A stretch of DNA of 63,152 nt, filler included, from Octopus bimaculoides (lineage: Eukaryota): NCBI RefSeq assembly GCF_001194135.2. It is 6 parts of 6 records of this genome, joined end to end, with 100 filler letters (N's around TTAATTAATTAA, not from the genome) between each part and the next. Parts side by side here need not be neighbours in the genome. Positions count along the whole stretch, not along the records: positions 29,106 to 48,162 come from NC_068990.1; 5 more parts are not named here. One strand, written 5' to 3'. The notes beneath the pieces were generated by a model. It did no database searches, was not told the DNA's origin, and worked only from the letters and a program-made list of their open reading frames with translations. Below are positions 1 through 48,162 of this stretch, in pieces (within the stretch, counting starts at the first letter, position 1; every line of letters begins with the position of its first letter). Position numbers and translations under genes: made by a program.

Positions 1-356
1 TTCAATACCAGCAGATGACAACGTTTCTCTAAAAGAAATGGAAAAACTTTCAAAATACAAAGACCTGGAAATAGAGATAACTCGAATGTGGAATCTAAAA
101 ACAGAAACAATTCCTATCATAGTAGGTGCCTTAGGTATAATAAAAAAATATTCAGACAAATACATAACAAAAACACCAGGACTTACAAATATATATAACA
201 TACAGAAAATTGCACTACTGGGTACTGCACACATTCTACGCAAAACACTTTCAATACAGTAAACATAAGAGCACCACAGCAAACCACAGCACATACCCAA
301 GGCGCACAGAGCTGCGCTCGGTAGTGAAGTGAAAGCACGTTATAAAAATAAAACTA

Positions 357-29504: not shown

Positions 29505-30927
29505 CATTCTTTTTGCTTTGTATTTGTACAAGTTGACTCCAAGTCTCGCCCAGAGAACTCAAGAGACAACAAGTTAGGAGTTCGTGTTGGTGTAATGACT
29601 AGGGTGCCATATATTTGGTTTGGCACAAAGTATTGTTCTAGCGAATGTTTGAGAAAACATTAAAAAATTATGTTTGTTTTAAAATTTGAGATTACATAGA
29701 CAGTATTTTACGTAGGATATGGGCAGTTCCCATCAGCACTATTTTAAAAATTTCTGCCATTTTTTAATTTCCTGATATCTGAGCTTGGTAGCCATCAGTC
29801 CCTCGGGCACAACAGGTATTGTTTTAGGTTTGAGGTTCTACATTTTGCCAATTTCTATTTCAAGATCTGGTGGGAACACAAACCAGCTCAAGTGCTTGAA
29901 AATGACATCTCACTCGTCTGGAACTTCACCGTTCAAACTGACAGAAAAATAGATGCGAATAGGCCAGTATATTGAAGGACTTTATATTTCAAGATCTTTA
30001 TACTTGCTCAGTTTTTGGTAGGTCTTGACAAATATATTTATGTCGATTGGGACAGTCATATCGATGAGGAGGCATGGTTTTTGTCTAAAGTCTTTCAGTA
30101 TAATGTCTGTCCTATTCGCATCTAGCTTTCTGTCAGTTTGAACAATGAAGTTACAGACGAGTGAAATGTCATGGAGACAAAATTATCAATGGTTTCATTT
30201 TGTTGTTTACATACATATAGTGGGCTATTGCCGTTCTTTTATATGTTGGCCTGGTAGCTCCTTGTAGGTATGCATTGATCTTGGGCTGCTATGATAAACC
30301 CTTCTGTCTCTGGTTTTAAGCCAGAAGACATTAACCATTCATGGATAAGGGCATTGTCAACATCGGTATTATTAGCTCTCTCTCGGTATTTGCCATTGAG
30401 AGATTTTTCTTGCCATTTATTAGTAAGAATATCTAATGCAGCAGTTTTAGCACGAGTTTTCAAGCGCTTAGCTTTTTCTGCGGGTGTTTCTAGTTCGTCT
30501 AATTCTTGAATTTGTTGTAATTGGAATTCATTTAGATATTCCTTTGCCTGTTTTGTTACTGAGTAAGATGCTTTCTTGCTTTCATGTTTTGAGACAAGTT
30601 TTAGCATCCAGTTCTCAGAGTTTTTCAGATAGGTGTCTAGGCCAATTGTGGCTACCTTCATTGTTAATGCCAGCTGTAGAAGTCCACGGCCTCCCTCTTT
30701 TCTTGGCAGATAAAGACGTTCTATATCTGCCTTAGGGTGGTGCATTCTATGCATTGTCAACAGTTTTCGTATTTTTCTGTCAAGATTACATATTTCAGTA
30801 ATTAACCAGTTAACGATATTGAAACTGTAAGTCACCACTGGTATGGCTAGAGCATTGATCGCTTCAATCCTGTTTCTTGCGTTTAGCTCTGTCTTCAGTA
30901 TTGCTCTCACCCTGCGATAACATTCTC

Positions 30928-30928
<1 letters not shown>
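29505..30928 (-). mobile_element. 5'-truncated R4/Dong-like LINE flanked by (TAA)n tracts
   Basis: RT C-terminal region (AIPVVTYSF, RLYLPRKEGGRGL, ETEGFIIAAQDQ) and RLE (TDRKLDANRTDIILKD, KLSKYKDL, GTAHILRK); (ATT)n on both sides. Confidence 0.9.
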
Positions 30929-31006
<78 letters not shown>

Positions 31007-31059
31007 CATCATTATCATCATTATTATTATTATGTGATTAAAACTCACTACTTATTTTA

Positions 31060-34520: not shown

Positions 34521-34632
34521 GCAGTTGCTGGANNNNNNNNNNNNNNNNNNNNNNNNNNNNNNNNNNNNNNNNNNNNNNNNNNNNNNNNNNNNNNNNNNNN
34601 NNNNNNNNNNNNNNNNNNNNNNNNNNNNNNNN

Positions 34633-34682
<50 letters not shown>

Positions 34683-34789
34683 CTACGTAAATGATTTCCG
34701 CTTTCTTAATTTTCATAAAGGATTCTATTCTAGCTTATTTTAGGCAAATTTGCAATATATAAGAGCAATATATATATGATGTAAGACCG

Positions 34790-38427: not shown

Positions 38428-39695
38428 CAGGGGTTGGACAAAATAATGGAAACACCTTAAAATTTCAAACAAATTTATTTTAATATTGGGGTAGGACCGC
38501 CTTTGGCAGTAATTACAGCTTGAATTCTACGAGGTATGGACTCGTACAAAGTTTGAATTGTTTCCGAAGGAATTTCTGTCCATTCTTCAGCTAAAACAGT
38601 CTCCAGTTCTTGTAGTGATGATAGTGGAGGATATCGACTCCTTACTTGTTTTTTCTAAAATGCACTATGAATGTTCTATAATATTTAGATCTGGGGACTG
38701 TGGTGGCCAGATAAGATGTTCAACTTCACTAGAATGTTCCTCGTGCCATTCAGTAAGAACTTTAGCTGTGTGAATTGGCGCATTATCATCCTGAAATATT
38801 GCGTTTCCATCCGGAAACAGTTCCACAACTATCGGATGAATTTGATCAGATAAAATGCTGAAATAGTCTTGCCGTGAAGGGAAACCATTGCGTCAGCGGA
38901 TATCCAAGATATAGCCCCCGCCCCAGATCAGCACAGATCCTCCTCCATGTTTAATAGTTGGAAGAAAGCAGTCTGGGTCAAATGATACTTTTAGCTGTCT
39001 CCACACGTATACTCAGCCAGTGGTCGGAAATAAGGTAAACGATGACTCGTCCGAAAAATTAACATTCTTCCACTGCTCTAGGGACCAATTCTGTAGGTTT
39101 TTTACTCCACTCTAAACGCTTTGCAACATTTGTTTTTGAAAGTAGAGCTTTTTCTGACTGCAGCCCTCCCGTGAAATCTGGCTCTGTGCAGCTCCAGGGG
39201 AATAGTTTTTGTGGAAAGTGAGTTCTCGATGTGGTTATTAAGCTCTTCAATAATTTTGGGAGCTGTACTTTTGTGATCCTTTTTAACAATTCTCGTAAGA
39301 GTCCGACGGTTCCTATCTGAAAGTTTTGGTTTTCTTCCGGAGTTTTGTTTCAACGAGGAGGATTTTCCCTCTTTCTCAAGGATTATCATTACTGTCGAGA
39401 CAGTACTTCTTGATATACCAAACATCTGGGCAGTTTTCGTTACGCTAGTGCTTGCCATACGAGCACCAACAATTTGACTTCTTTGAAAGTCCGAAAGATC
39501 TGCCATTTTAATGAATTTTGATTTACCTTTTTCTGATGAAATGAAACAGCAATTTTAGCAAAACATATTAAGGAACACTAATAATAAGTAAAAAAAAAAG
39601 AACATAAAAATAAACAAACCTTTGACGGTTTTATAGATATTTTAAAATTATGATGCTATGATGCTAGGTATTTCCATTATTTTGTCCAACCCCTG
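38428..39695 (-). mobile_element. Tc1-family DNA transposon, degraded transposase
   Basis: 30-bp TIRs CAGGGGTTGGACAAAATAATGGAAACACCT with one mismatch, TA on both sides; MADLSDFQRSQIVGARM...SGRKPKLS HTH region; frameshifted DDE region. Confidence 0.92.
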
Positions 39696-39779: not shown

Positions 39780-39820
<41 letters not shown>

Positions 39821-39830
39821 NNNNNNNNNN

Positions 39831-39873
<43 letters not shown>

Positions 39874-40003
39874 GTATATGCATGTGTATGCATATGTGTA
39901 TGCATATGTGTGTATACTTTTATATATGTGAGCATGTATTTGCGCACATATTTTGTATATTTGTATGCGTGTCTATATGTGTATGTACATTTGTACTTAT
40001 GTA

Positions 40004-40197: not shown

Positions 40198-40829
40198 TAG
40201 ATATACATGTAATTTGATGTGTGCGTTTTCATGTGTTCGTTGCGCAAGCTATATGAAGTATCTAATTGTCGTTGGTTACTTTCGAGCGCCATGATGTAAT
40301 ACTTTTTGACCCTATCTGTTTTCCCCTTTCTCTCGCTAGTTTTCTGTTTCTCTTTCTTTTATTTCTTTTTCCTTCTTTTTCTTNNNNNNNNNNNNNNNNN
40401 NNNNNNNNNNNNNNNNNNNNNNNNNNNNNNNNNNNNNNNNNNNNNNNNNNNNNNNNNNNNNNNNNNNNNNNNNNNNNNNNNNNNNNNNNNNNNNNNNNNN
40501 NNNNNNNNNNNNNNNNNNNNNNNNNNNNNNNNNNNNNNNNNNNNNNNNNNNNNNNNNNNNNNNNNNNNNNNNNNNNNNNNNNNNNNNNNNNNNNNNNNNN
40601 NNNNNNNNNNNNNNNNNNNNNNNNNNNNNNNNNNNNNNNNNNNNNNNNNNNNNNNNNNNNNNNNNNNNNNNNNNNNNNNNNNNNNNNNNNNNNNNNNNNN
40701 NNNNNNNNNNNNNNNNNNNNNNNNNNNNNNNATATATATATATATATATACGCACTCATACGCACGGTAAGTAACCTACACAAACACAGCCCTACATTTA
40801 TATAGTTATATAAAATGTAGATATATATG

Positions 40830-41700
40830 AGAGTAAGCTGAAAAGTTCATAAGCTGGCTATAAAAGTGTTATGCTAGAGATATGAACGCATAAATTTTAA
40901 CTCTTCTTTATTAATAACTGCATTGCATTTTGCTAGGTCAACTGACATCTGACTGTTCAAAGAAGACTTCAAAAGTAACTGGTAAAATTTGGCAACGAGG
41001 TATTATCAAGTACCTGGAAAAAGAGGGTCTAGCCCCAACAATATTCATACTGACATGGTTGCTACATTGGGAGACGACATTCCAGCTTTATCAACATTAG
41101 AATGATTGTTTTTCTTGAAGATTCCATTGTGAACTGAATGTTATTATTCCATTAAGTAGTATTTATCATTAATTTCTCTGCTTTTATTCGAAAGGATAAA
41201 ACAATCGCCTAGAATTTTTACCAGCTCTCTTTTATAAGAGTGTGGACTAAGAACTTTATAGGCCGATTATAAAGAATTAACATTAGAGCTGTGAATTTCA
41301 GCCCTTATTTGGCATCGTAGTGTTATCAAGTATCTGTAGAAAAAGGTTTTACTCCCTCCCCCAAAGACATTCATGCCTATATGGTTGCTACATTAGAGGA
41401 TGACACTCCAGCTTTATGAAAAGTGGGAAGCTGAAATTTGGTGGGGAAGGGAGATTTTGTAGATGACCCAAGGTCTGGACATCTTGCAACTGCCATCACT
41501 GAGGAAAATATTGATCGTGTTTATCACATGGAGATGGATGACAGGCGATTGAGTATAAATCAAATAGCCAATGCTATTAGCATATCCCGTAAGAGAGTTG
41601 AGAATATTCTGCACCATTGATTATAATGGTATATTGTACTTCCATATCCTTTCACCAACCAGAAGCTGACAAGAACTATCCAAAGCACAAATATAAGTGA
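40830..41700 (+). mobile_element. Two degraded mariner (Hsmar-like) transposase 5' fragments
   Basis: Repeated GTTATCAAGTA...ATGGTTGCTACATT.G..GA.GAC segments; VDDPRSGHLATAITEENIDRV...DDRRL...IA matches the mariner N-terminus. Confidence 0.7.
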
Positions 41701-42134
41701 TATTTGATAGGATAATCCTTAATTGACAATGTGATCCACAAACAAACAAAAACAGGATTTTTATGTCATTACGTATAACAAAACTAATCAAACAGTCCTC
41801 TCCAGTTTTCAGTTTCATGTTTCTATATTCAATTTCTGTTGGAATTGAGTACCATTAAGATGTTAATCTGTTCCGAGAAAATACCTTTTCTGCAAGTCAA
41901 ATGCAATACATATTTACAATGATTTTTGAAAAACCTGTCTCATTGGTAGAATGACTATAGATTAGGCATCCAGGTAGGCGACGCTGTTTCATTCTAACTC
42001 GTAATAGGCCAGAAATGTTGCAAGTACAACATTTAAAACTATAGTTTCAAATTATTTAATTTAGTTTAAAATCAATCCTTTCCTTTTAGCATTTTTACAA
42101 AACCTACACGGAAACAAATTTATTCGTAATGCTA

Positions 42135-42196
42135 CCACGTCATCATTTGCCTGTCGTCATCATCTCTGCATTTCCAAAAAGCTTGACGTCATAAAA
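42135..42196 (+). promoter_or_regulatory. Cluster of CRE/ATF-type motifs upstream of the PDZ gene
   Basis: CCACGTCA (reverse of UPRE TGACGTGG) at 42135-42142, a further CGTCA half-site near 42155, perfect CRE TGACGTCA at 42184-42191 followed by TAAAA. Confidence 0.4.
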
Positions 42197-42219
42197 TTTT
42201 CTTCGTTCGAAACCATTGA

Positions 42220-43017
42220 ATGATGGCACCATTGGATCCTATAAACATTGTTCTGAAAAGAGACTCGTATGGATTCGGTTTTGGTTTCCAACGGCAAACT
42301 CAAAATGGTAAAACGGGTATTTACGTTGTTGATGTTCTCAGAAATTACTACAGCAACAGAGCAGTCATGTTAGACGAGTCCGATCGCATATTAGCAATAA
42401 ACGGCAGTGATTTAGAAAATAAAAATTCTAATCAGATACGCGAGTTGTTGAAAAAGTCTGGCAACGATGTATGTCTAACTATTCAGCCGAATAATAAGGA
42501 AACAAATACTATTCGAGCTGCTATACTGAATAATATTCCTGACTTTCTAAAGAATACAGACCAGTCGTGGAAAGCAAAGTTCTTAAAAATTATAAGAAAT
42601 ATATTTGAACAACCCAAAGGTGTTTTTGTTGTGACTTTCAGAAGATCAAATGATCTCAAATTTCGTATTCTAGGAGGTTCTGAACAGCCAATTATAAGCG
42701 GTTATACGGGAATTCATATCGTAAAGCTAGACAAGGATATACAATATTGCAGTGAAGGGATGCAGTTGTTAGTAGGTGATCGACTTATCAGTGCCAATAA
42801 CATACCTTTAGATGGTGAAACTCTTGCGAATACTGACGCCATTTTACGAAATGGTAAAGAAGACACTATCAAATTGATTGTGTCACGCCTTGAATTTACC
42901 AGAAAAAAGAAGCTTGCAAATAAGAAAAGAGGTGGGATGTCTTTTATGTCACCCATATCAATGGAAATAGTGTTCCTAAGCACTTTGGCTTTCATGATTT
43001 CTCGTTTTATTAATTAA
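42220..43017 (+). CDS. Intronless tandem-PDZ protein with C-terminal tail anchor (SYNJ2BP/OMP25-like second half)
   Basis: 265-aa open ORF, in-frame TGA directly before the ATG, second ATG in strong context (atgATGG). PDZ1 aa ~8-90 (KRDSYGFGFGF...GIYVVDV...DRILAINGSDL). PDZ2 aa ~135-223 (LKFRILGGSEQ...GIHIVKL...GDRLISANNIPL). Basic RKKKLANKKR aa 228-237, hydrophobic aa 240-260, AATAAA at 43158-43163. Confidence 0.85.
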   Translation: MMAPLDPINIVLKRDSYGFGFGFQRQTQNGKTGIYVVDVLRNYYSNRAVMLDESDRILAINGSDLENKNSNQIRELLKKSGNDVCLTIQPNNKETNTIRAAILNNIPDFLKNTDQSWKAKFLKIIRNIFEQPKGVFVVTFRRSNDLKFRILGGSEQPIISGYTGIHIVKLDKDIQYCSEGMQLLVGDRLISANNIPLDGETLANTDAILRNGKEDTIKLIVSRLEFTRKKKLANKKRGGMSFMSPISMEIVFLSTLAFMISRFIN

Positions 43018-43590
43018 ATTCCATGAAATACATTCTTCGAGCAAAAGAGAGAACTAACTATACAAACTAACACCCAGTAAACATCTATGGGAAATGTAAA
43101 AATGCTTTTGCTCTTAAATATGAGGAGAATTGTCAATTATAGACACACGCATATAGGAATAAATCTATGCATGGGATATCCTAACCTAATCTTTACTGAC
43201 TTCGAGATTTCGACTGATCTGTGAATTATCCAAGCAGTTTGAATAACCCACAGATCTGGTGAAACTTCTAAGCTACTATCAATTAAATATTAAACTCTTC
43301 ATGTGTTTTGACTTAATTATTCAGGAAGCGTTCATCGTTTTTATGCATACGAAATACTTAATTGTTACCATACAGTCCGTCTCTACGTTCTGAGTTCAAA
43401 TTCCGCTGAAGTCGACTTTGCCTTTCAAAAGTATCAGCTAAGTACTGGGGTCGATATAATCGTCCTATTTCCTCCTCCGAAGTTTCTGGCCCTGTGCCAA
43501 AATTTGAAATCAGTCTATAGCCATACATACACGCATACATAATGGCTGCGACTCGATTTCGAATATTACTATCGCTTGGTGGTGTTCTTA

Positions 43591-44353
43591 AAACTGTTAT
43601 GACCTTAGCATAGACTTTCAGGGTTCATTTGAGACAAAGCTGAAGGTCTATACTACTTGTGCTTTGTCTTCGTTGCTATGATCCTTAAGTATTTCTGTAT
43701 GGTGAGTTTTTCTAAAGACTTATAAACCTTTTCTCAGCTGTGGCAACAATGTGCATTTCTTTCAGTATGTGTTTCATAAATATTTTGGTGACCCTTCTTC
43801 ATATGACGTTTTAATCCGTCATGTAAAGCATGTTCTCTTCCACTTTGAAAGATAACGTATATTTCAAAGTTAACAACTTCTCTGTGTGTTTGGCTCCTCC
43901 GATGACATCTGAGGCTTGGCTTACTTAGACAGACCTGCCTACACTCCTTATATGGTAAATTGGGCTGTGCACCAACATACTCAGGAAAATTCACATCAAA
44001 ACCATGACGAATATTTCTCTTCAGTTGTTCAAGCTTGTTACGGAAACCATTTTGTTTAAATTAGTTCCTTTCATCAGACATTTTCCTCCGGGATGAACGA
44101 TCCAGAGCGGAGTTTCCCAGTCCATTTTTCTGGTGTATTCTTAATACAATCCTTATACTTTACTTTCGGTTTGTGCGCTGGTCTTTTACGCTGGGATAAC
44201 TCACCATGCAGAAAATACTCAAGGATCATATGTTTGAGGTAAGTAAGCCAGGTCACACACGCATATAGCAACGAAGACAAAACACAAGTAGTATAGACCT
44301 TCAGCTTTGTCTCAAATGAACCCTGAAAGTCTATGCTAAGGTCATAACAGTTT
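43591..44353. repeat. 89-bp inverted repeat, 1 mismatch (43591-43679 / 44265-44353)
   Basis: AAACTGTTATGACCTTAGC...CGTTGCTAT is reverse-complementary to ATAGCAACG...GTCATAACAGTTT; the arm is LINE coding sequence. Confidence 0.9.
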
Positions 44354-46069: not shown

Positions 46070-46879
46070 GTAAGTCTTAGTTTAATTCTTTTGTAACCCT
46101 AAAGATTCCGCTCGTGATTTCACAGCAAACAAGGTACAGGGCGAGACTTTAGATTGTGTAGGTGTATTTTTACCCACTTCAGTGTTTACTCACGGCCTGT
46201 TATACGTCGCTATGAGTAGAACAACGGACTCCAGTAATTTGAAAATTAGTGTCAACAAAATAGAAAACATCATCTACAAAGAAGTTTTGTAATCATGTTG
46301 ATATTATCGAAATGAATATGATTTAAGTAAGAAAATTTGTGAACTTTGAATGTATAAGTATAAACAAGCGTAAATAAGTGTAAACAACTAAAATAAAAGT
46401 ATATCTAAATGACATTTAAAAAAAAAAACTTTTTATGTAGTGGTCAAAGGAAGCTCTGGCTTTCGTTAGAAGTGGTCCACATAACCATCCATGATACAGA
46501 GGCTGGGAGACTATTTCAGTTCGGGACTGAATCGTCATCACATGTTACTTAGTCACAAACACATATCATATAGCTGCAACAGAATGCTGTATCACCAACA
46601 ATAATGTGATTTATCTAAGACATTACCCAATAACCTATCAAGTCCATTTCACATTTCTCAATATATATACTGCTGTTATGACTTCCCCACCTCATTTTAT
46701 TCCTCCATCGTATATAGATAGATTTGCTAGTTAAAACAATGGATGTACGAGTTTGCTTTAAAGTTGAGTTAGAAATCTCAAATTCGGATCATTAAAATTT
46801 GAATTAACACATTTCCAATGAGCATTCACCCTAATTCTTACCTGATTGTATCTTATTTTCACGACAGTTATGTCTGTTC

Positions 46880-48162
46880 TTAGTTTCATTAACGAAGGGA
46901 AACCTAATAATTACGATACTATGAAAATGAGAATAACCGAAGAACTGAAAACCACAGATCTTAGAATGGACCACAGATTATATCTCCCAAAAATCAAGAT
47001 AGACAATAAAACAACATCAATAATAAATAACATAAACCTGGCCGTCACGGAACTAACAACCACAGAAACAACTAGCAATATCACTGAGCTAAATGACATA
47101 ATATATGCGGCAGCCACTGCAGCCACAAAAGAAGCAGGATACTCACTCAAACCCATCCGAACAGGAGTTCTACCACCCAAACAGACCTTGTGGATAAATA
47201 GTATCCAGAACAAAATTAAAAAAAAGAGAAAAGTTTTATCGATTCTCAACGAAATTAGTAGACAATCAACACAACTAAGTAACAAGAAGAAAACAAAAAT
47301 ACTGTACAAATACAGCATTACAGAAAAAGACTTACCTGAGGCAAAAGAAAAACTAAAGCAAGATATCCTTGCCAAAGCACAAAGGATCCGCCTATATGAG
47401 AAACGCCAACGTTTCTTTGAACAAAACAAACAGTGCAAATCCAACCCCAAAAAACTCTACCAAGAACTGGGTAAAAATAAAATAGACATTACTGCAGTAC
47501 CAACCGCAGAAGAACTGGAAGAATTCTGGAAACAAATGTGGTCGGTGAAGCAACAACCCCAGAAAAGGACCATTAAAACAACGAACTTAGCACCTGAGAA
47601 ACTCTGGACCCCTATAACAACTGAAGAGGTCACCCAGACACNNNNNNNNNNGGACCCCTATAACAACTGAAGAGGTCACCCAGACACTGCAAAGACTAAG
47701 TAACTGGAAGGCACCTGGGCACGACAAGATCCCCAACTTCTGGTTAAAACACCTAACAGGAATACATAAAAAGCAGGCAGAAAACTTTAACAACATACTA
47801 GCATAGCCAGAGACAATGCCTGAATGGCTCACGAAAGGGAAAACCATCTTAATTCCCAAATCCACGGAAACGGAGAAACCACAAAACTATAGACCTATAA
47901 CCTCTCTCCCTACGATCTACAAAGCCTTTACTGCAATAATATCGCAGAGATTAAGTAAGCACCTGGAAAATAACAAGCTGTTTCCAGAAGAGCAGAAGGG
48001 ATGCTGCAAGGGCTCATACGGCTGTAAAGATCAATTATTGATCAATAAAGCCATAACTGAAGACAGCCACAGAAAGAAGAAAGGCCTCAGTATGGCCTGG
48101 GTGGACTACCAAAAGGCTTTCGACAGTGTTCCCCACACCTGGATTCTGGAAACACTAGCCAT
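46880..48162 (+). mobile_element. R4/Dong-like LINE fragment (N-terminal region plus RT domains)
   Basis: WKAPGHDKIPNFWLK, NYRPITSLPTIYK, EQKGC..GSYGCKDQLLI, AWVDYQKAFDSVPH; ends at a gap. Confidence 0.9.

What the first reader, a model, noticed from the sequence alone, without database searches (positions are those of the whole stretch)
42220..43017. Intronless two-PDZ tail-anchored protein: a possible lineage-specific OMP25/SYNJ2BP derivative
Seen: the only clean non-transposon ORF in 63 kb, with PDZ-linker-PDZ-basic patch-hydrophobic tail architecture. Established: SYNJ2BP/OMP25 is a single PDZ plus C-terminal anchor on the mitochondrial outer membrane, and PDZ2 here resembles it (F.I.GG.[ED]Q..I.G..GI). 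Inference: an extra N-terminal PDZ with a canonical GFGF loop was fused to an OMP25-like module whose loop has diverged to DLKF, giving a two-handed membrane adaptor. Lack of introns amid transposon debris suggests retrogene origin.
Basis: partly seen in the sequence, partly recalled or inferred. Interest (0 to 1): 0.7.

Follow-up and report, generated by a model that had tools for sequence, protein, structure and literature searches.

The report
Intronless two-PDZ tail-anchored cephalopod gene
This is a real, selectively maintained, single-exon octopus gene for a small scaffold protein with two PDZ domains and a predicted C-terminal membrane anchor; it is found only in octopods and two unidentified related lineages, and descent from the mitochondrial protein SYNJ2BP/OMP25 could not be shown.

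Summary
The ORF is real: 42220-43017 (+), 265 aa, with a stop codon directly before the ATG. It has two Pfam PDZ domains and a hydrophobic C-terminal helix.

It is a gene, not debris. Intact single-exon orthologues exist in Octopus vulgaris (96% identity), another Octopus (Logan contig), Argonauta hians (61%), and two more distant unidentified lineages (groups A and B, 300-302 aa, 34-39%). dN/dS is 0.17-0.44, and 0.06 for PDZ1. Against Argonauta only the coding sequence aligns.

A cluster of CRE-like sites lies just upstream. A perfect TGACGTCA sits at exactly -36 in all octopods, Argonauta included. This argues for a self-contained transcription unit, not an exon of a larger gene.

An exhaustive HMM search of 1.84 billion representative proteins found only two family clusters, so the family is narrow.

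The SYNJ2BP link is weak:
- Human SYNJ2BP is the best single-domain PDB match to PDZ2 (43 bits, next 39.8).
- The reverse test fails: a SYNJ2BP profile prefers DLG PDZ domains (84-87 bits) and gives the window's PDZ2 18 bits.
- A neighbour-joining tree does not join them (1.3% bootstrap).

No parent gene or retroposition scar was found. The basic patch and the DLKF loop are octopod-only.

Verdict: a new two-PDZ variant of the tail-anchored PDZ adaptor. Origin, target membrane and expression are unresolved.

The parts
42138..42191 (+). Proximal promoter-like cluster. It holds three CGTCAT (CRE/ATF half-site) motifs at 42138, 42155 and 42187. The last is part of a perfect palindromic CRE, TGACGTCA, at 42184-42191, which is -36 from the ATG.
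   Evidence: TGACGTCA occurs once in the 48 kb window (0.14 expected). Three of the ten CGTCAT matches fall in this 55 nt stretch. TGACGTCA is at exactly -36 in the window, O. vulgaris, the Logan Octopus contig and Argonauta, whose flanks otherwise do not align. Groups A and B carry GTCAT-type sites within about 100 nt of their ATG. Function as a promoter is inferred.
42220..43017 (+). Single-exon coding sequence: 265 codons plus TAA stop.
   Evidence: ORF. TGA lies immediately upstream in frame. The O. vulgaris and Argonauta gene models have the same 798-nt extent. dN/dS is 0.17-0.44.
42241..42486 (+). PDZ1 (residues 8-89). The carboxylate-binding loop GFGF is canonical; it is GYGF in groups A and B.
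   Evidence: Pfam PF00595 covers residues 11-89. AF2 places strands and a helix at 8-89 with pLDDT about 74. It is the most constrained region, dN/dS 0.06-0.12. Best single-domain relatives are MAGI, PDZK1, GRIP, MPDZ and PARD3 PDZs at 36-44 bits; none is clearly closest.
42496..42615 (+). Conserved inter-PDZ linker (residues 93-132), with family-invariant motifs R-x-AIL-x-NIP and E-x-PKG.
   Evidence: Invariant columns R99, A101, I102, L103, N105, I106, P107, K123, R126, E130, P132, K133 and G134 across 9 sequences. dN/dS is 0.08-0.20. AF2 predicts two helices at low confidence. No function is known.
42616..42891 (+). PDZ2 (residues 133-224). The loop reads DLKF in octopods, where Lys replaces the second Gly of GLGF. 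Groups A and B have a loop closer to the consensus (TLGA or ILSA) and a 28-residue insert before the last strand.
   Evidence: PDZ_6 hit at 183-220. PDB phmmer match at 130-214. AF2 core pLDDT is 72-79. dN/dS is 0.27-0.31. Loop and insert are visible in the alignment.
42892..42948 (+). Spacer (residues 225-243). Strongly basic in Octopus only.
   Evidence: Net charge upstream of the hydrophobic segment (last 13-15 residues) is +6 to +7 in Octopus, +1 in Argonauta and -1 in groups A and B. It is the least constrained region, dN/dS about 0.35.
42949..43014 (+). Predicted tail anchor (residues 244-265): SPISMEIVFLSTLAFMISRFIN. At most 5 residues follow the hydrophobic segment.
   Evidence: It is the highest hydropathy window of the protein. 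GRAVY is 1.4-1.7 in octopods and 1.9-2.3 in groups A and B, with low hydrophobic moment of 0.01-0.33. AF2 predicts a helix at 245-261. S244, P245, I246, E249, T255 and L256 are invariant in all 9 sequences. dN/dS is 0.07-0.19. Membrane insertion is inferred, not shown.
43158..43163 (+). Candidate polyadenylation signal AATAAA, 143 nt after the first base of the stop codon.
   Evidence: Same offset in O. vulgaris (143), 137 in the Logan Octopus contig and 113 in Argonauta. None was found within 700 nt in groups A and B. Use as a poly(A) signal is inferred.

Best explanation
The ORF is a functional, intronless, taxonomically restricted gene. It is found in octopods and in two unidentified, probably cephalopod, lineages.

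It encodes a tail-anchored scaffold. Two cytosol-facing PDZ domains are held on an organelle membrane by a C-terminal transmembrane helix. The membrane would be the mitochondrial outer membrane or the ER.

The likely mechanism is the one known for SYNJ2BP/OMP25, but with two binding sites. After post-translational insertion of the tail, each PDZ domain captures the C-terminal motif of a partner protein. Partners are thereby recruited to, or bridged at, that membrane surface. PDZ1 has a canonical GFGF/GYGF loop and is the most constrained region, so it is probably the main binding site. PDZ2 is more derived.

Transcription probably starts a few tens of nucleotides upstream of the ATG, from a compact promoter bearing CRE/ATF-type sites.

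Shown: the ORF, its domains, its conservation, purifying selection, absence of introns, the narrow distribution, and the conserved upstream motifs.

Inferred: membrane insertion, which membrane, peptide binding, promoter activity, and any descent from SYNJ2BP or from a retrocopy.
For: - ORF and domains.
- Orthologues: each is 265 aa and a single 798-nt exon in O. vulgaris and Argonauta hians. A further Octopus copy is colinear with the window.
- Distant members: 300-302 aa with the same domain order and a homologous SPIxxE... hydrophobic C-terminus, also single-exon.
- Selection: dN/dS is 0.17-0.19 over dS of about 1.3 (window vs Argonauta), 0.17-0.18 between groups A and B, and 0.19-0.44 among close species. 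Every region is below 0.4, and the tail is at 0.07-0.19.
- Only the CDS aligns between Octopus and Argonauta, and between groups A and B.
- Narrow family: just two clusters at E < 1e-30 among 1.84 billion representatives.
- Tail: terminal position, moderate GRAVY, low hydrophobic moment, predicted helix.
- Upstream motifs: CRE at -36 in four octopod genomes and related sites in groups A and B.
- SYNJ2BP as a working analogue: it is a tail-anchored PDZ protein of the mitochondrial outer membrane that recruits partners (PMC5404927, PMC10627786, PMC7164261, as listed).
Against: - No expression data could be reached. The Logan contigs are colinear genomic unitigs without poly(A) ends.
- The hydrophobic segment is short and only moderately hydrophobic. 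It contains an invariant Glu, and in octopods an Arg near its end, so membrane spanning is a prediction.
- Target membrane is not predictable. Tail charge is 0 to +1 and GRAVY is 1.4-2.3. Under the rules in PMC5450235 this leaves both ER and mitochondria open.
- The PDZ2 loop in octopods has Lys in place of the second loop Gly, so canonical carboxylate binding by PDZ2 is uncertain.
- The AF2 model is only moderately confident (mean pLDDT 59.8).
Confidence: 0.6

Rival explanations
1. It is a true SYNJ2BP/OMP25 derivative, either an orthologue or a duplicate. On this view PDZ2, the spacer and the tail are the ancestral OMP25 module, and PDZ1 plus the linker were added at the N-terminus.
For: - Human SYNJ2BP is the best single-domain PDB hit of the PDZ2 profile: 43 bits, next DLG2 PDZ2 at 39.8.
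- 120 vertebrate SYNJ2BP sequences score a median of 40.7 bits, against 36.4 for the best of 874 other PDZ domains.
- BLASTP aligns window 141-262 with SYNJ2BP 18-142, colinearly through spacer and membrane segment (PISMEIV...AFMISR vs PIFMVLV...AFMRYR).
- The order PDZ, roughly 20-residue spacer, terminal hydrophobic helix is the same.
Against: - It is not reciprocal. The SYNJ2BP profile ranks DLG PDZ1/2 first (84-87 bits). Family domains rank 357th or lower of 1043, and the window's PDZ1 (36.3) outscores its PDZ2 (18.3).
- NJ bootstrap support for PDZ2+SYNJ2BP is 1.3%.
- The tail resemblance rests on a few residues in a hydrophobic segment. A similar-looking match to P0150 turned out to be a fragment of a multi-PDZ protein.
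- The basic C-terminal flank of SYNJ2BP (RYRQQL) is absent in groups A and B.
- Whether cephalopods have a separate canonical SYNJ2BP could not be checked. The list was filled by vertebrate sequences.
Confidence: 0.25
2. It is a retrocopy of a multi-exon tandem-PDZ scaffold gene that acquired a hydrophobic C-terminus. Candidate parents are of the NHERF/PDZK1, MAGI, GRIP, DLG or MPDZ type. The source-given name 'NHE-RF2-like' would then point to its origin.
For: - It is intronless in all eight genomic copies.
- It sits alone among transposon fragments, with no other called gene within 10 kb in O. vulgaris or Argonauta.
- PDZ1 has a GYGF/GFGF loop. It is nearest to PDZK1_1 or GRIP domains in NJ replicates and scores 34-44 bits with PDZK1, MAGI and GRIP PDZs.
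- The PDZ-linker-PDZ unit aligns as one stretch to tandem PDZs of large scaffolds.
Against: - No parent stands out. The high totals of multi-PDZ proteins are sums over 5-11 domains.
- The best per-domain scores come from different families for PDZ1 and PDZ2.
- NHERF PDZs are not among the top 60 PDB hits for PDZ2.
- The NHERF C-terminal ERM-binding motif is not seen in the tail (own knowledge of the motif, read against the sequence).
- No poly(A) remnant or target-site duplication is visible, though none would be expected to survive at this age.
Confidence: 0.3
3. The C-terminal hydrophobic helix is not a membrane anchor. It would instead be a protein-binding or self-binding element, making this a soluble tandem-PDZ adaptor. 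It might be auto-inhibited, as in NHERF1 or X11/Mint.
For: - GRAVY is only 1.4-1.7 in octopods, and the segment contains an invariant Glu and an Arg.
- Groups A and B end in -S-L-F, which reads as a class I PDZ-binding motif (S/T-x-hydrophobic; own knowledge). This is seen in the sequences.
Against: - Hydrophobic moment is low (0.01-0.33). The segment is 17-20 uninterrupted apolar or small residues at the extreme C-terminus, typical of tail anchors.
- Octopod termini (-RFIN, -RFIP) are not PDZ ligands.
- The whole segment is conserved, not just the last residues.
Confidence: 0.12

Closest known systems
SYNJ2BP / OMP25 (synaptojanin-2-binding protein)
   Same: Both are small proteins with a PDZ domain, a short spacer and a hydrophobic helix at the extreme C-terminus. 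The presumed mode of action is the same: recruiting partners to an organelle surface through their C-termini. SYNJ2BP is the best single-domain PDB match of the PDZ2 profile. A colinear BLASTP alignment runs from PDZ2 through the tail.
   Different: This protein has two PDZ domains and a conserved 40-residue linker, where SYNJ2BP has one PDZ. The similarity is not reciprocal and has no tree support. The membrane segment is less hydrophobic (GRAVY 1.4-2.3 against 2.35-2.5). The basic C-terminal flank is reduced to one Arg in octopods and is absent in groups A and B. Localisation is unknown.
NHERF1/2 and PDZK1 (NHERF3) tandem-PDZ adaptors
   Same: The order PDZ-linker-PDZ-C-terminal helix is shared. 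PDZ1 has a GYGF/GFGF loop. NHERF3 PDZs are among the best single-sequence PDB hits for PDZ1 (E 1e-7). The O. vulgaris and Argonauta records are named 'NHE-RF2-like'.
   Different: Profile scores for NHERF3 (34 bits) are below MPDZ, PARD3 and PATJ for PDZ1. NHERF is absent from the top 60 hits for PDZ2. The C-terminus is a uniformly hydrophobic segment, not the amphipathic ERM-binding helix. The name looks like a best-hit transfer, not orthology.
Tandem-PDZ units of DLG/PSD-95, syntenin, GRIP and PATJ
   Same: The fold is shared. Foldseek top matches are PSD-95 PDZ1-2, Scribble PDZ3-4, GRIP1 PDZ1-2, PATJ PDZ8-9 and the syntenin tandem.
   Different: Sequence identity is 14-21% (14-26% including single-domain matches). 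The linker is long and family-specific. Those proteins have no membrane anchor.

Membership tests
PDZ domain superfamily (Pfam PF00595) | Sequence match above the curated threshold, and a PDZ fold. | tested here: met
   PF00595 scores 52.6 bits against a cutoff of 23.2, with two stretches. AF2 gives two beta-sandwich-plus-helix cores. Foldseek assigns probability 1.00 to tandem-PDZ structures.
Tail-anchored membrane proteins | A single hydrophobic segment within the last ~30 residues, a very short C-terminal remainder, and no N-terminal signal or other membrane segment. | tested here: met
   The only strongly hydrophobic window is residues 242-264. Between 0 and 5 residues follow it. GRAVY is 1.4-2.3 and hydrophobic moment is low. 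This is prediction only; insertion was not tested.
SYNJ2BP / OMP25 | Architecture: one PDZ domain followed by the tail anchor (about 145 aa). | tested here: not met
   There are two PDZ domains and 265-302 aa. The SYNJ2BP clusters listed are mostly 143-148 aa with one PDZ.
SYNJ2BP / OMP25 | The PDZ domain is specifically related to the SYNJ2BP PDZ (reciprocal best similarity or a shared clade). | tested here: inconclusive
   Forward, SYNJ2BP is the best single domain for PDZ2 (43 vs 39.8 bits; median 40.7 vs 36.4). In reverse, the SYNJ2BP profile prefers DLG (84-87 bits) and gives the window's PDZ2 18.3 bits. NJ support is 1.3%. No invertebrate SYNJ2BP was available.
SYNJ2BP / OMP25 | Basic residues flanking the membrane segment on the C-terminal side (RYRQQL in human). 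| tested here: not met
   C-terminal tail charge is 0 to +1 in octopods and 0 in groups A and B, against +2 in human SYNJ2BP.
SYNJ2BP / OMP25 | Localisation to the mitochondrial outer membrane. | not testable with these tools
   It needs a GFP-tail or antibody experiment. The physicochemical rules (PMC5450235) do not separate ER from mitochondria for these values.
NHERF family (name carried by the O. vulgaris and Argonauta records) | Two NHERF-type PDZ domains plus a C-terminal ERM-binding amphipathic helix. | tested here: not met
   Two PDZs are present. However, NHERF PDZs are not the closest for either domain in profile searches. The C-terminus is uniformly hydrophobic with low moment. Absence of the ERM-binding motif was judged by reading the sequence against the motif as I know it.
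Retrogene (processed retrocopy) | No introns, an identifiable intron-containing parent gene, and a poly(A) remnant with target-site duplications. | tested here: inconclusive
   It is intronless in all eight genomic copies. No parent was identified. No poly(A) tract was seen downstream. The age of the gene would have erased such marks.

The most novel reading that the evidence does not exclude
This would be a coleoid-cephalopod innovation: an intronless gene for a two-handed, tail-anchored PDZ tether. It would bridge or recruit two different C-terminal-motif partners at the mitochondrial or ER surface, under CREB/ATF-type (activity- or cAMP-dependent) transcriptional control. No such architecture has been described in model animals. 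The gene also appears to be missing from several cephalopod genome annotations.
Probability: 0.25. Interest if true: 0.55.

Novelty: new variant of a known kind. Interest (0 to 1): 0.35.

Why it matters
Tail-anchored PDZ proteins are rare. To my knowledge SYNJ2BP is the only well-studied one, and it organises mitochondria-ER contacts and mRNA or receptor recruitment. A conserved two-PDZ version restricted to cephalopods would be a compact, testable example of a lineage-specific organelle-surface adaptor. These animals are noted for neural and genomic novelty.

The locus is also practically useful:
- The current database name ('NHE-RF2-like isoform X4') is probably misleading.
- Only two named database records were found, and the window's own protein is not in the collection, so the gene may be missed in other cephalopod annotations.
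- The conserved CRE cluster at -36 to -85 gives a ready-made minimal promoter to test.

It is not a major surprise, though. New combinations of PDZ domains with other modules are common in animal evolution.

Tried and rejected
1. MPDZ/PATJ C-terminal tandem as parent. This was suggested by single-stretch alignments. It was rejected because the totals are sums over 5-11 PDZs, and the best per-domain scores come from MAGI, PDZK1 and GRIP for PDZ1, and from SYNJ2BP, DLG and another multi-PDZ protein for PDZ2.

2. P0150 (280 aa) as a distant two-PDZ tail-anchored relative. Its 'tail' resembles SxxE..F..T..FM. It was rejected because it is a fragment of an MPDZ-like protein running into the start of the next PDZ (compared with the MPDZ-like sequences). 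This shows how easily tail similarity arises by chance.

3. P0144 as a relative. hhalign gives 97% probability but only 23% identity. It is a generic tandem PDZ of MPDZ type.

4. Logan contigs as transcript evidence. They are colinear with genomic DNA, end at variable points and carry no poly(A). They therefore give no expression evidence.

5. Identifying the source species of groups A and B. Searching run and assembly accessions in the literature found nothing for them. A JGI metagenome scan found no further members.

6. Finding a cephalopod SYNJ2BP. The third and last homologue search was filled by 120 vertebrate SYNJ2BP clusters. A literature search returned nothing.

7. First AF2 run with 3 sequences. 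The model was unusable (pLDDT 40.5).

8. Rfam scan of the piece. No matches.
Full report
**Observation**

The window holds an ORF at 42220..43017 on the + strand encoding 265 aa. The codon directly before the ATG is TGA (42217-42219). There is no AG between that stop and the ATG, so the frame cannot be entered from an upstream exon at this point.

The piece has 36% G+C and 0.0565 stop codons per codon. A stop-free run of 266 codons has probability 1.9e-7, about 0.007 expected in six frames of the 19 kb piece.

Pfam finds PDZ (PF00595, 52.6 bits, E 5.9e-14) in two stretches. A phmmer search of the PDB matches residues 4-108 and 130-214 to many PDZ domains.

Other ORFs of 90 aa or more in the piece are low-complexity runs, artefacts of N runs, or unassigned. 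Two match transposon domains: a Tc1/mariner helix-turn-helix at 39102-39506(-) and a reverse transcriptase at 47816-48160(+).

**It is a gene under selection**

The first homologue search returned two proteins, both 265 aa:
- CAI9728939.1 of Octopus vulgaris, 96% identical.
- GAB1598118.1 of Argonauta hians, 61% identical.

In both genomes the gene model is one 798-nt exon, with no other called gene within 10 kb. A third Octopus copy, on a Logan contig from SRR11869391, is colinear with window 41614-43404 at 88% DNA identity. Against Argonauta only the coding region aligns, at 71%. The flanks do not.

dN/dS values:

| Comparison | dN/dS |
|---|---|
| Window vs O. vulgaris | 0.41-0.44 |
| Window vs Logan Octopus | 0.24-0.30 |
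| Window vs Argonauta (dS about 1.3) | 0.17-0.19 |

An exhaustive HMMER search of 1.84 billion representative proteins used the three-sequence octopod profile (window, O. vulgaris, Argonauta). It found only two hits below 1e-30: the octopod cluster and P0004 (300 aa, E 3e-42). Everything else was generic multi-PDZ proteins.

P0004 lies on a 15-kb contig of an ENA metagenome assembly, again as a single exon. A profile search added P0153-P0156 (301-302 aa) from Logan assemblies. Their contigs form a group of three close lineages (group B), 91-94% identical including flanks. Group B aligns to the P0004 contig (group A) only in the coding region, at 76%.

dN/dS is 0.17-0.18 between groups A and B and 0.19-0.33 within group B. 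The source organisms of A and B could not be identified. That they are decapodiform cephalopods is my inference from the degree of divergence.

**Anatomy**

All nine sequences share the same order: PDZ1, a roughly 40-residue linker, PDZ2, a spacer, and a hydrophobic C-terminus. The linker carries invariant motifs (R-x-AIL-x-NIP ... E-x-PKG).

Constraint by region, window vs Argonauta:

| Region | dN/dS |
|---|---|
| PDZ1 | 0.06 |
| Linker | 0.17 |
| PDZ2 | 0.29 |
| Spacer | 0.35 |
| Tail | 0.19 |

- **PDZ1** has a canonical loop, GFGF in octopods and GYGF in groups A and B.
Groups A and B also carry a 28-residue insert before the last strand of PDZ2.
- **The basic patch** is confined to Octopus. 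Net charge is +6 to +7 there, +1 in Argonauta and -1 in groups A and B.
- **The tail** keeps S244, P245, I246, E249, T255 and L256 invariant. It is the most hydrophobic window of the protein. GRAVY is 1.4-1.7 in octopods and 1.9-2.3 in groups A and B, with a low hydrophobic moment and at most five residues after it.

AlphaFold2 with the nine-sequence alignment gives two PDZ cores at pLDDT 70-79, a low-confidence linker, and a helix at 245-261. Foldseek matches tandem-PDZ crystal structures such as PSD-95 PDZ1-2.

**A conserved promoter-like element**

The octamer TGACGTCA, a perfect palindromic CRE, occurs once in the whole window, at 42184-42191, which is -36 from the ATG (0.14 expected). Two further CGTCAT half-sites lie at 42138 and 42155.

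The same three sites, with TGACGTCA again at exactly -36, are present in O. vulgaris, the Logan Octopus contig and Argonauta. The rest of the Argonauta flank is unalignable. Groups A and B carry GTCAT-type sites within about 100 nt of their ATG. These include TGACGTCAT in L006 and TTACGTCAT in L004.

An AATAAA follows the stop codon by 143 nt in two of the three Octopus copies (137 in the third) and by 113 nt in Argonauta.

Together with the upstream stop and the conserved start, this points to a compact, self-contained transcription unit. That the sites act as a promoter is inferred.

**Relationship to SYNJ2BP/OMP25**

I tested each PDZ separately with family profiles.

For PDZ1, the best single domains in the PDB are MPDZ, PARD3 and PATJ (41-42 bits), with SYNJ2BP at 34. 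Among the fetched proteins the best are MAGI, PDZK1-like and GRIP-like PDZs (36-44 bits).

For PDZ2, evidence in favour:
- The best single domain in the PDB is SYNJ2BP at 43 bits, followed by DLG2 PDZ2 at 39.8.
- 120 vertebrate SYNJ2BP sequences score a median of 40.7 bits. The best of 874 other PDZ domains scores 36.4.
- BLASTP of the window protein against human SYNJ2BP gives a second alignment from PDZ2 through the spacer into the membrane segment (window 141-262 vs 18-142, 26% identity).

Evidence against:
- A profile of 76 full-length vertebrate SYNJ2BP sequences was searched against 1043 PDZ domains. It ranks DLG PDZ1/2 first at 84-87 bits.
- In that search the window's PDZ1 scores 36.3 bits (rank 358) and its PDZ2 only 18.3.
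- A bootstrapped neighbour-joining tree of 54 domains joins PDZ2 with SYNJ2BP in 1.3% of replicates. PDZ1 falls nearest to PDZK1 or GRIP domains. That tree is crude and prone to long-branch effects.

The SYNJ2BP PDZ is a consensus-like, DLG-type domain, which may be why it scores well with divergent profiles. I could not find out whether cephalopods have a separate canonical SYNJ2BP. My last homologue search was saturated by vertebrate sequences.

Descent from OMP25 is therefore possible but not shown. The resemblance in architecture, and probably in mode of action, stands.

**Retrogene question**

All eight genomic copies lack introns, and the gene sits alone among transposon fragments. I found no parent gene, and no poly(A) remnant or target-site duplication. 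Such marks would not be expected to survive at this age. Retroposition remains a reasonable but untested origin.

**Mechanism**

My best explanation is a tail-anchored scaffold. The C-terminal helix would insert post-translationally into an organelle membrane, leaving two PDZ domains in the cytosol. These would bind C-terminal motifs of partners and recruit or bridge them at that surface, as SYNJ2BP does on mitochondria (papers listed).

Under the published rules for tail-anchor sorting (TMD hydrophobicity against tail charge; PMC5450235), a tail charge of 0 to +1 with moderate hydrophobicity does not separate ER from mitochondria.

The main rival for the tail is a non-membrane protein-binding helix. 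I rate that lower because the segment is uniformly apolar, terminal, and conserved along its whole length.

**Novelty and verdict**

The protein is already deposited for two species under a name ('NHE-RF2-like isoform X4') that my tests do not support. The window's own protein is not in the 15-billion-sequence collection. No paper on it was found.

I know of no described two-PDZ tail-anchored protein. I therefore rate it a new variant of a known kind, of moderate interest. Expression, localisation, ligands and origin remain open.

Noticed in passing
window 43591-43679 and 44265-44353: An 89-nt inverted repeat, 99% complementary, flanks 585 nt. It lies about 570 nt downstream of the gene's stop codon and looks like a young foldback or MITE-type element. 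Both arms are also present at the orthologous place in O. vulgaris (L001 11456-11544 and 12103-12191).
   Followed up: partly
window 39102-39506 (-) and 41438-41620 (+): Fragments of DNA-transposon transposase. The first matches Tc1/mariner-type helix-turn-helix domains at E 7e-7. The second reads like a mariner N-terminal region but had no Pfam hit.
   Followed up: partly
window 46846-47670 (+) and 47816-48160 (+): A 274-aa ORF without a Pfam hit is followed by a reverse-transcriptase fragment (RVT_1, E 7.7e-13). This is probably one LINE-type element cut by the end of the piece. Another unassigned 269-aa ORF at 30239-31048 (-) starts with a long isoleucine run made by a TTA/TAA microsatellite.
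   Followed up: partly
window 34600-34700, 39780-39880, 40380-40700: Runs of N (assembly gaps) are flanked by TA/ATA microsatellites. They create spurious long ORFs containing X in the ORF list.
   Followed up: no
L001 and L002 (O. vulgaris OX597823.1 and Argonauta hians BAAFZT010000002.1): Only two named database records of this family were found, and both carry the name 'NHE-RF2-like isoform X4'. The window's own protein is absent from the 15-billion-protein collection. This suggests the gene is unannotated in some cephalopod assemblies and that the name was transferred from a weak best hit.
   Followed up: partly
L004 5421-6323; L005, L006, L011: Groups A and B of the family end in -S-L-F, which reads as a class I PDZ-binding motif. 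They also carry a 28-residue insert inside PDZ2 and an acidic rather than basic spacer. The source organisms of these contigs are unknown.
   Followed up: partly
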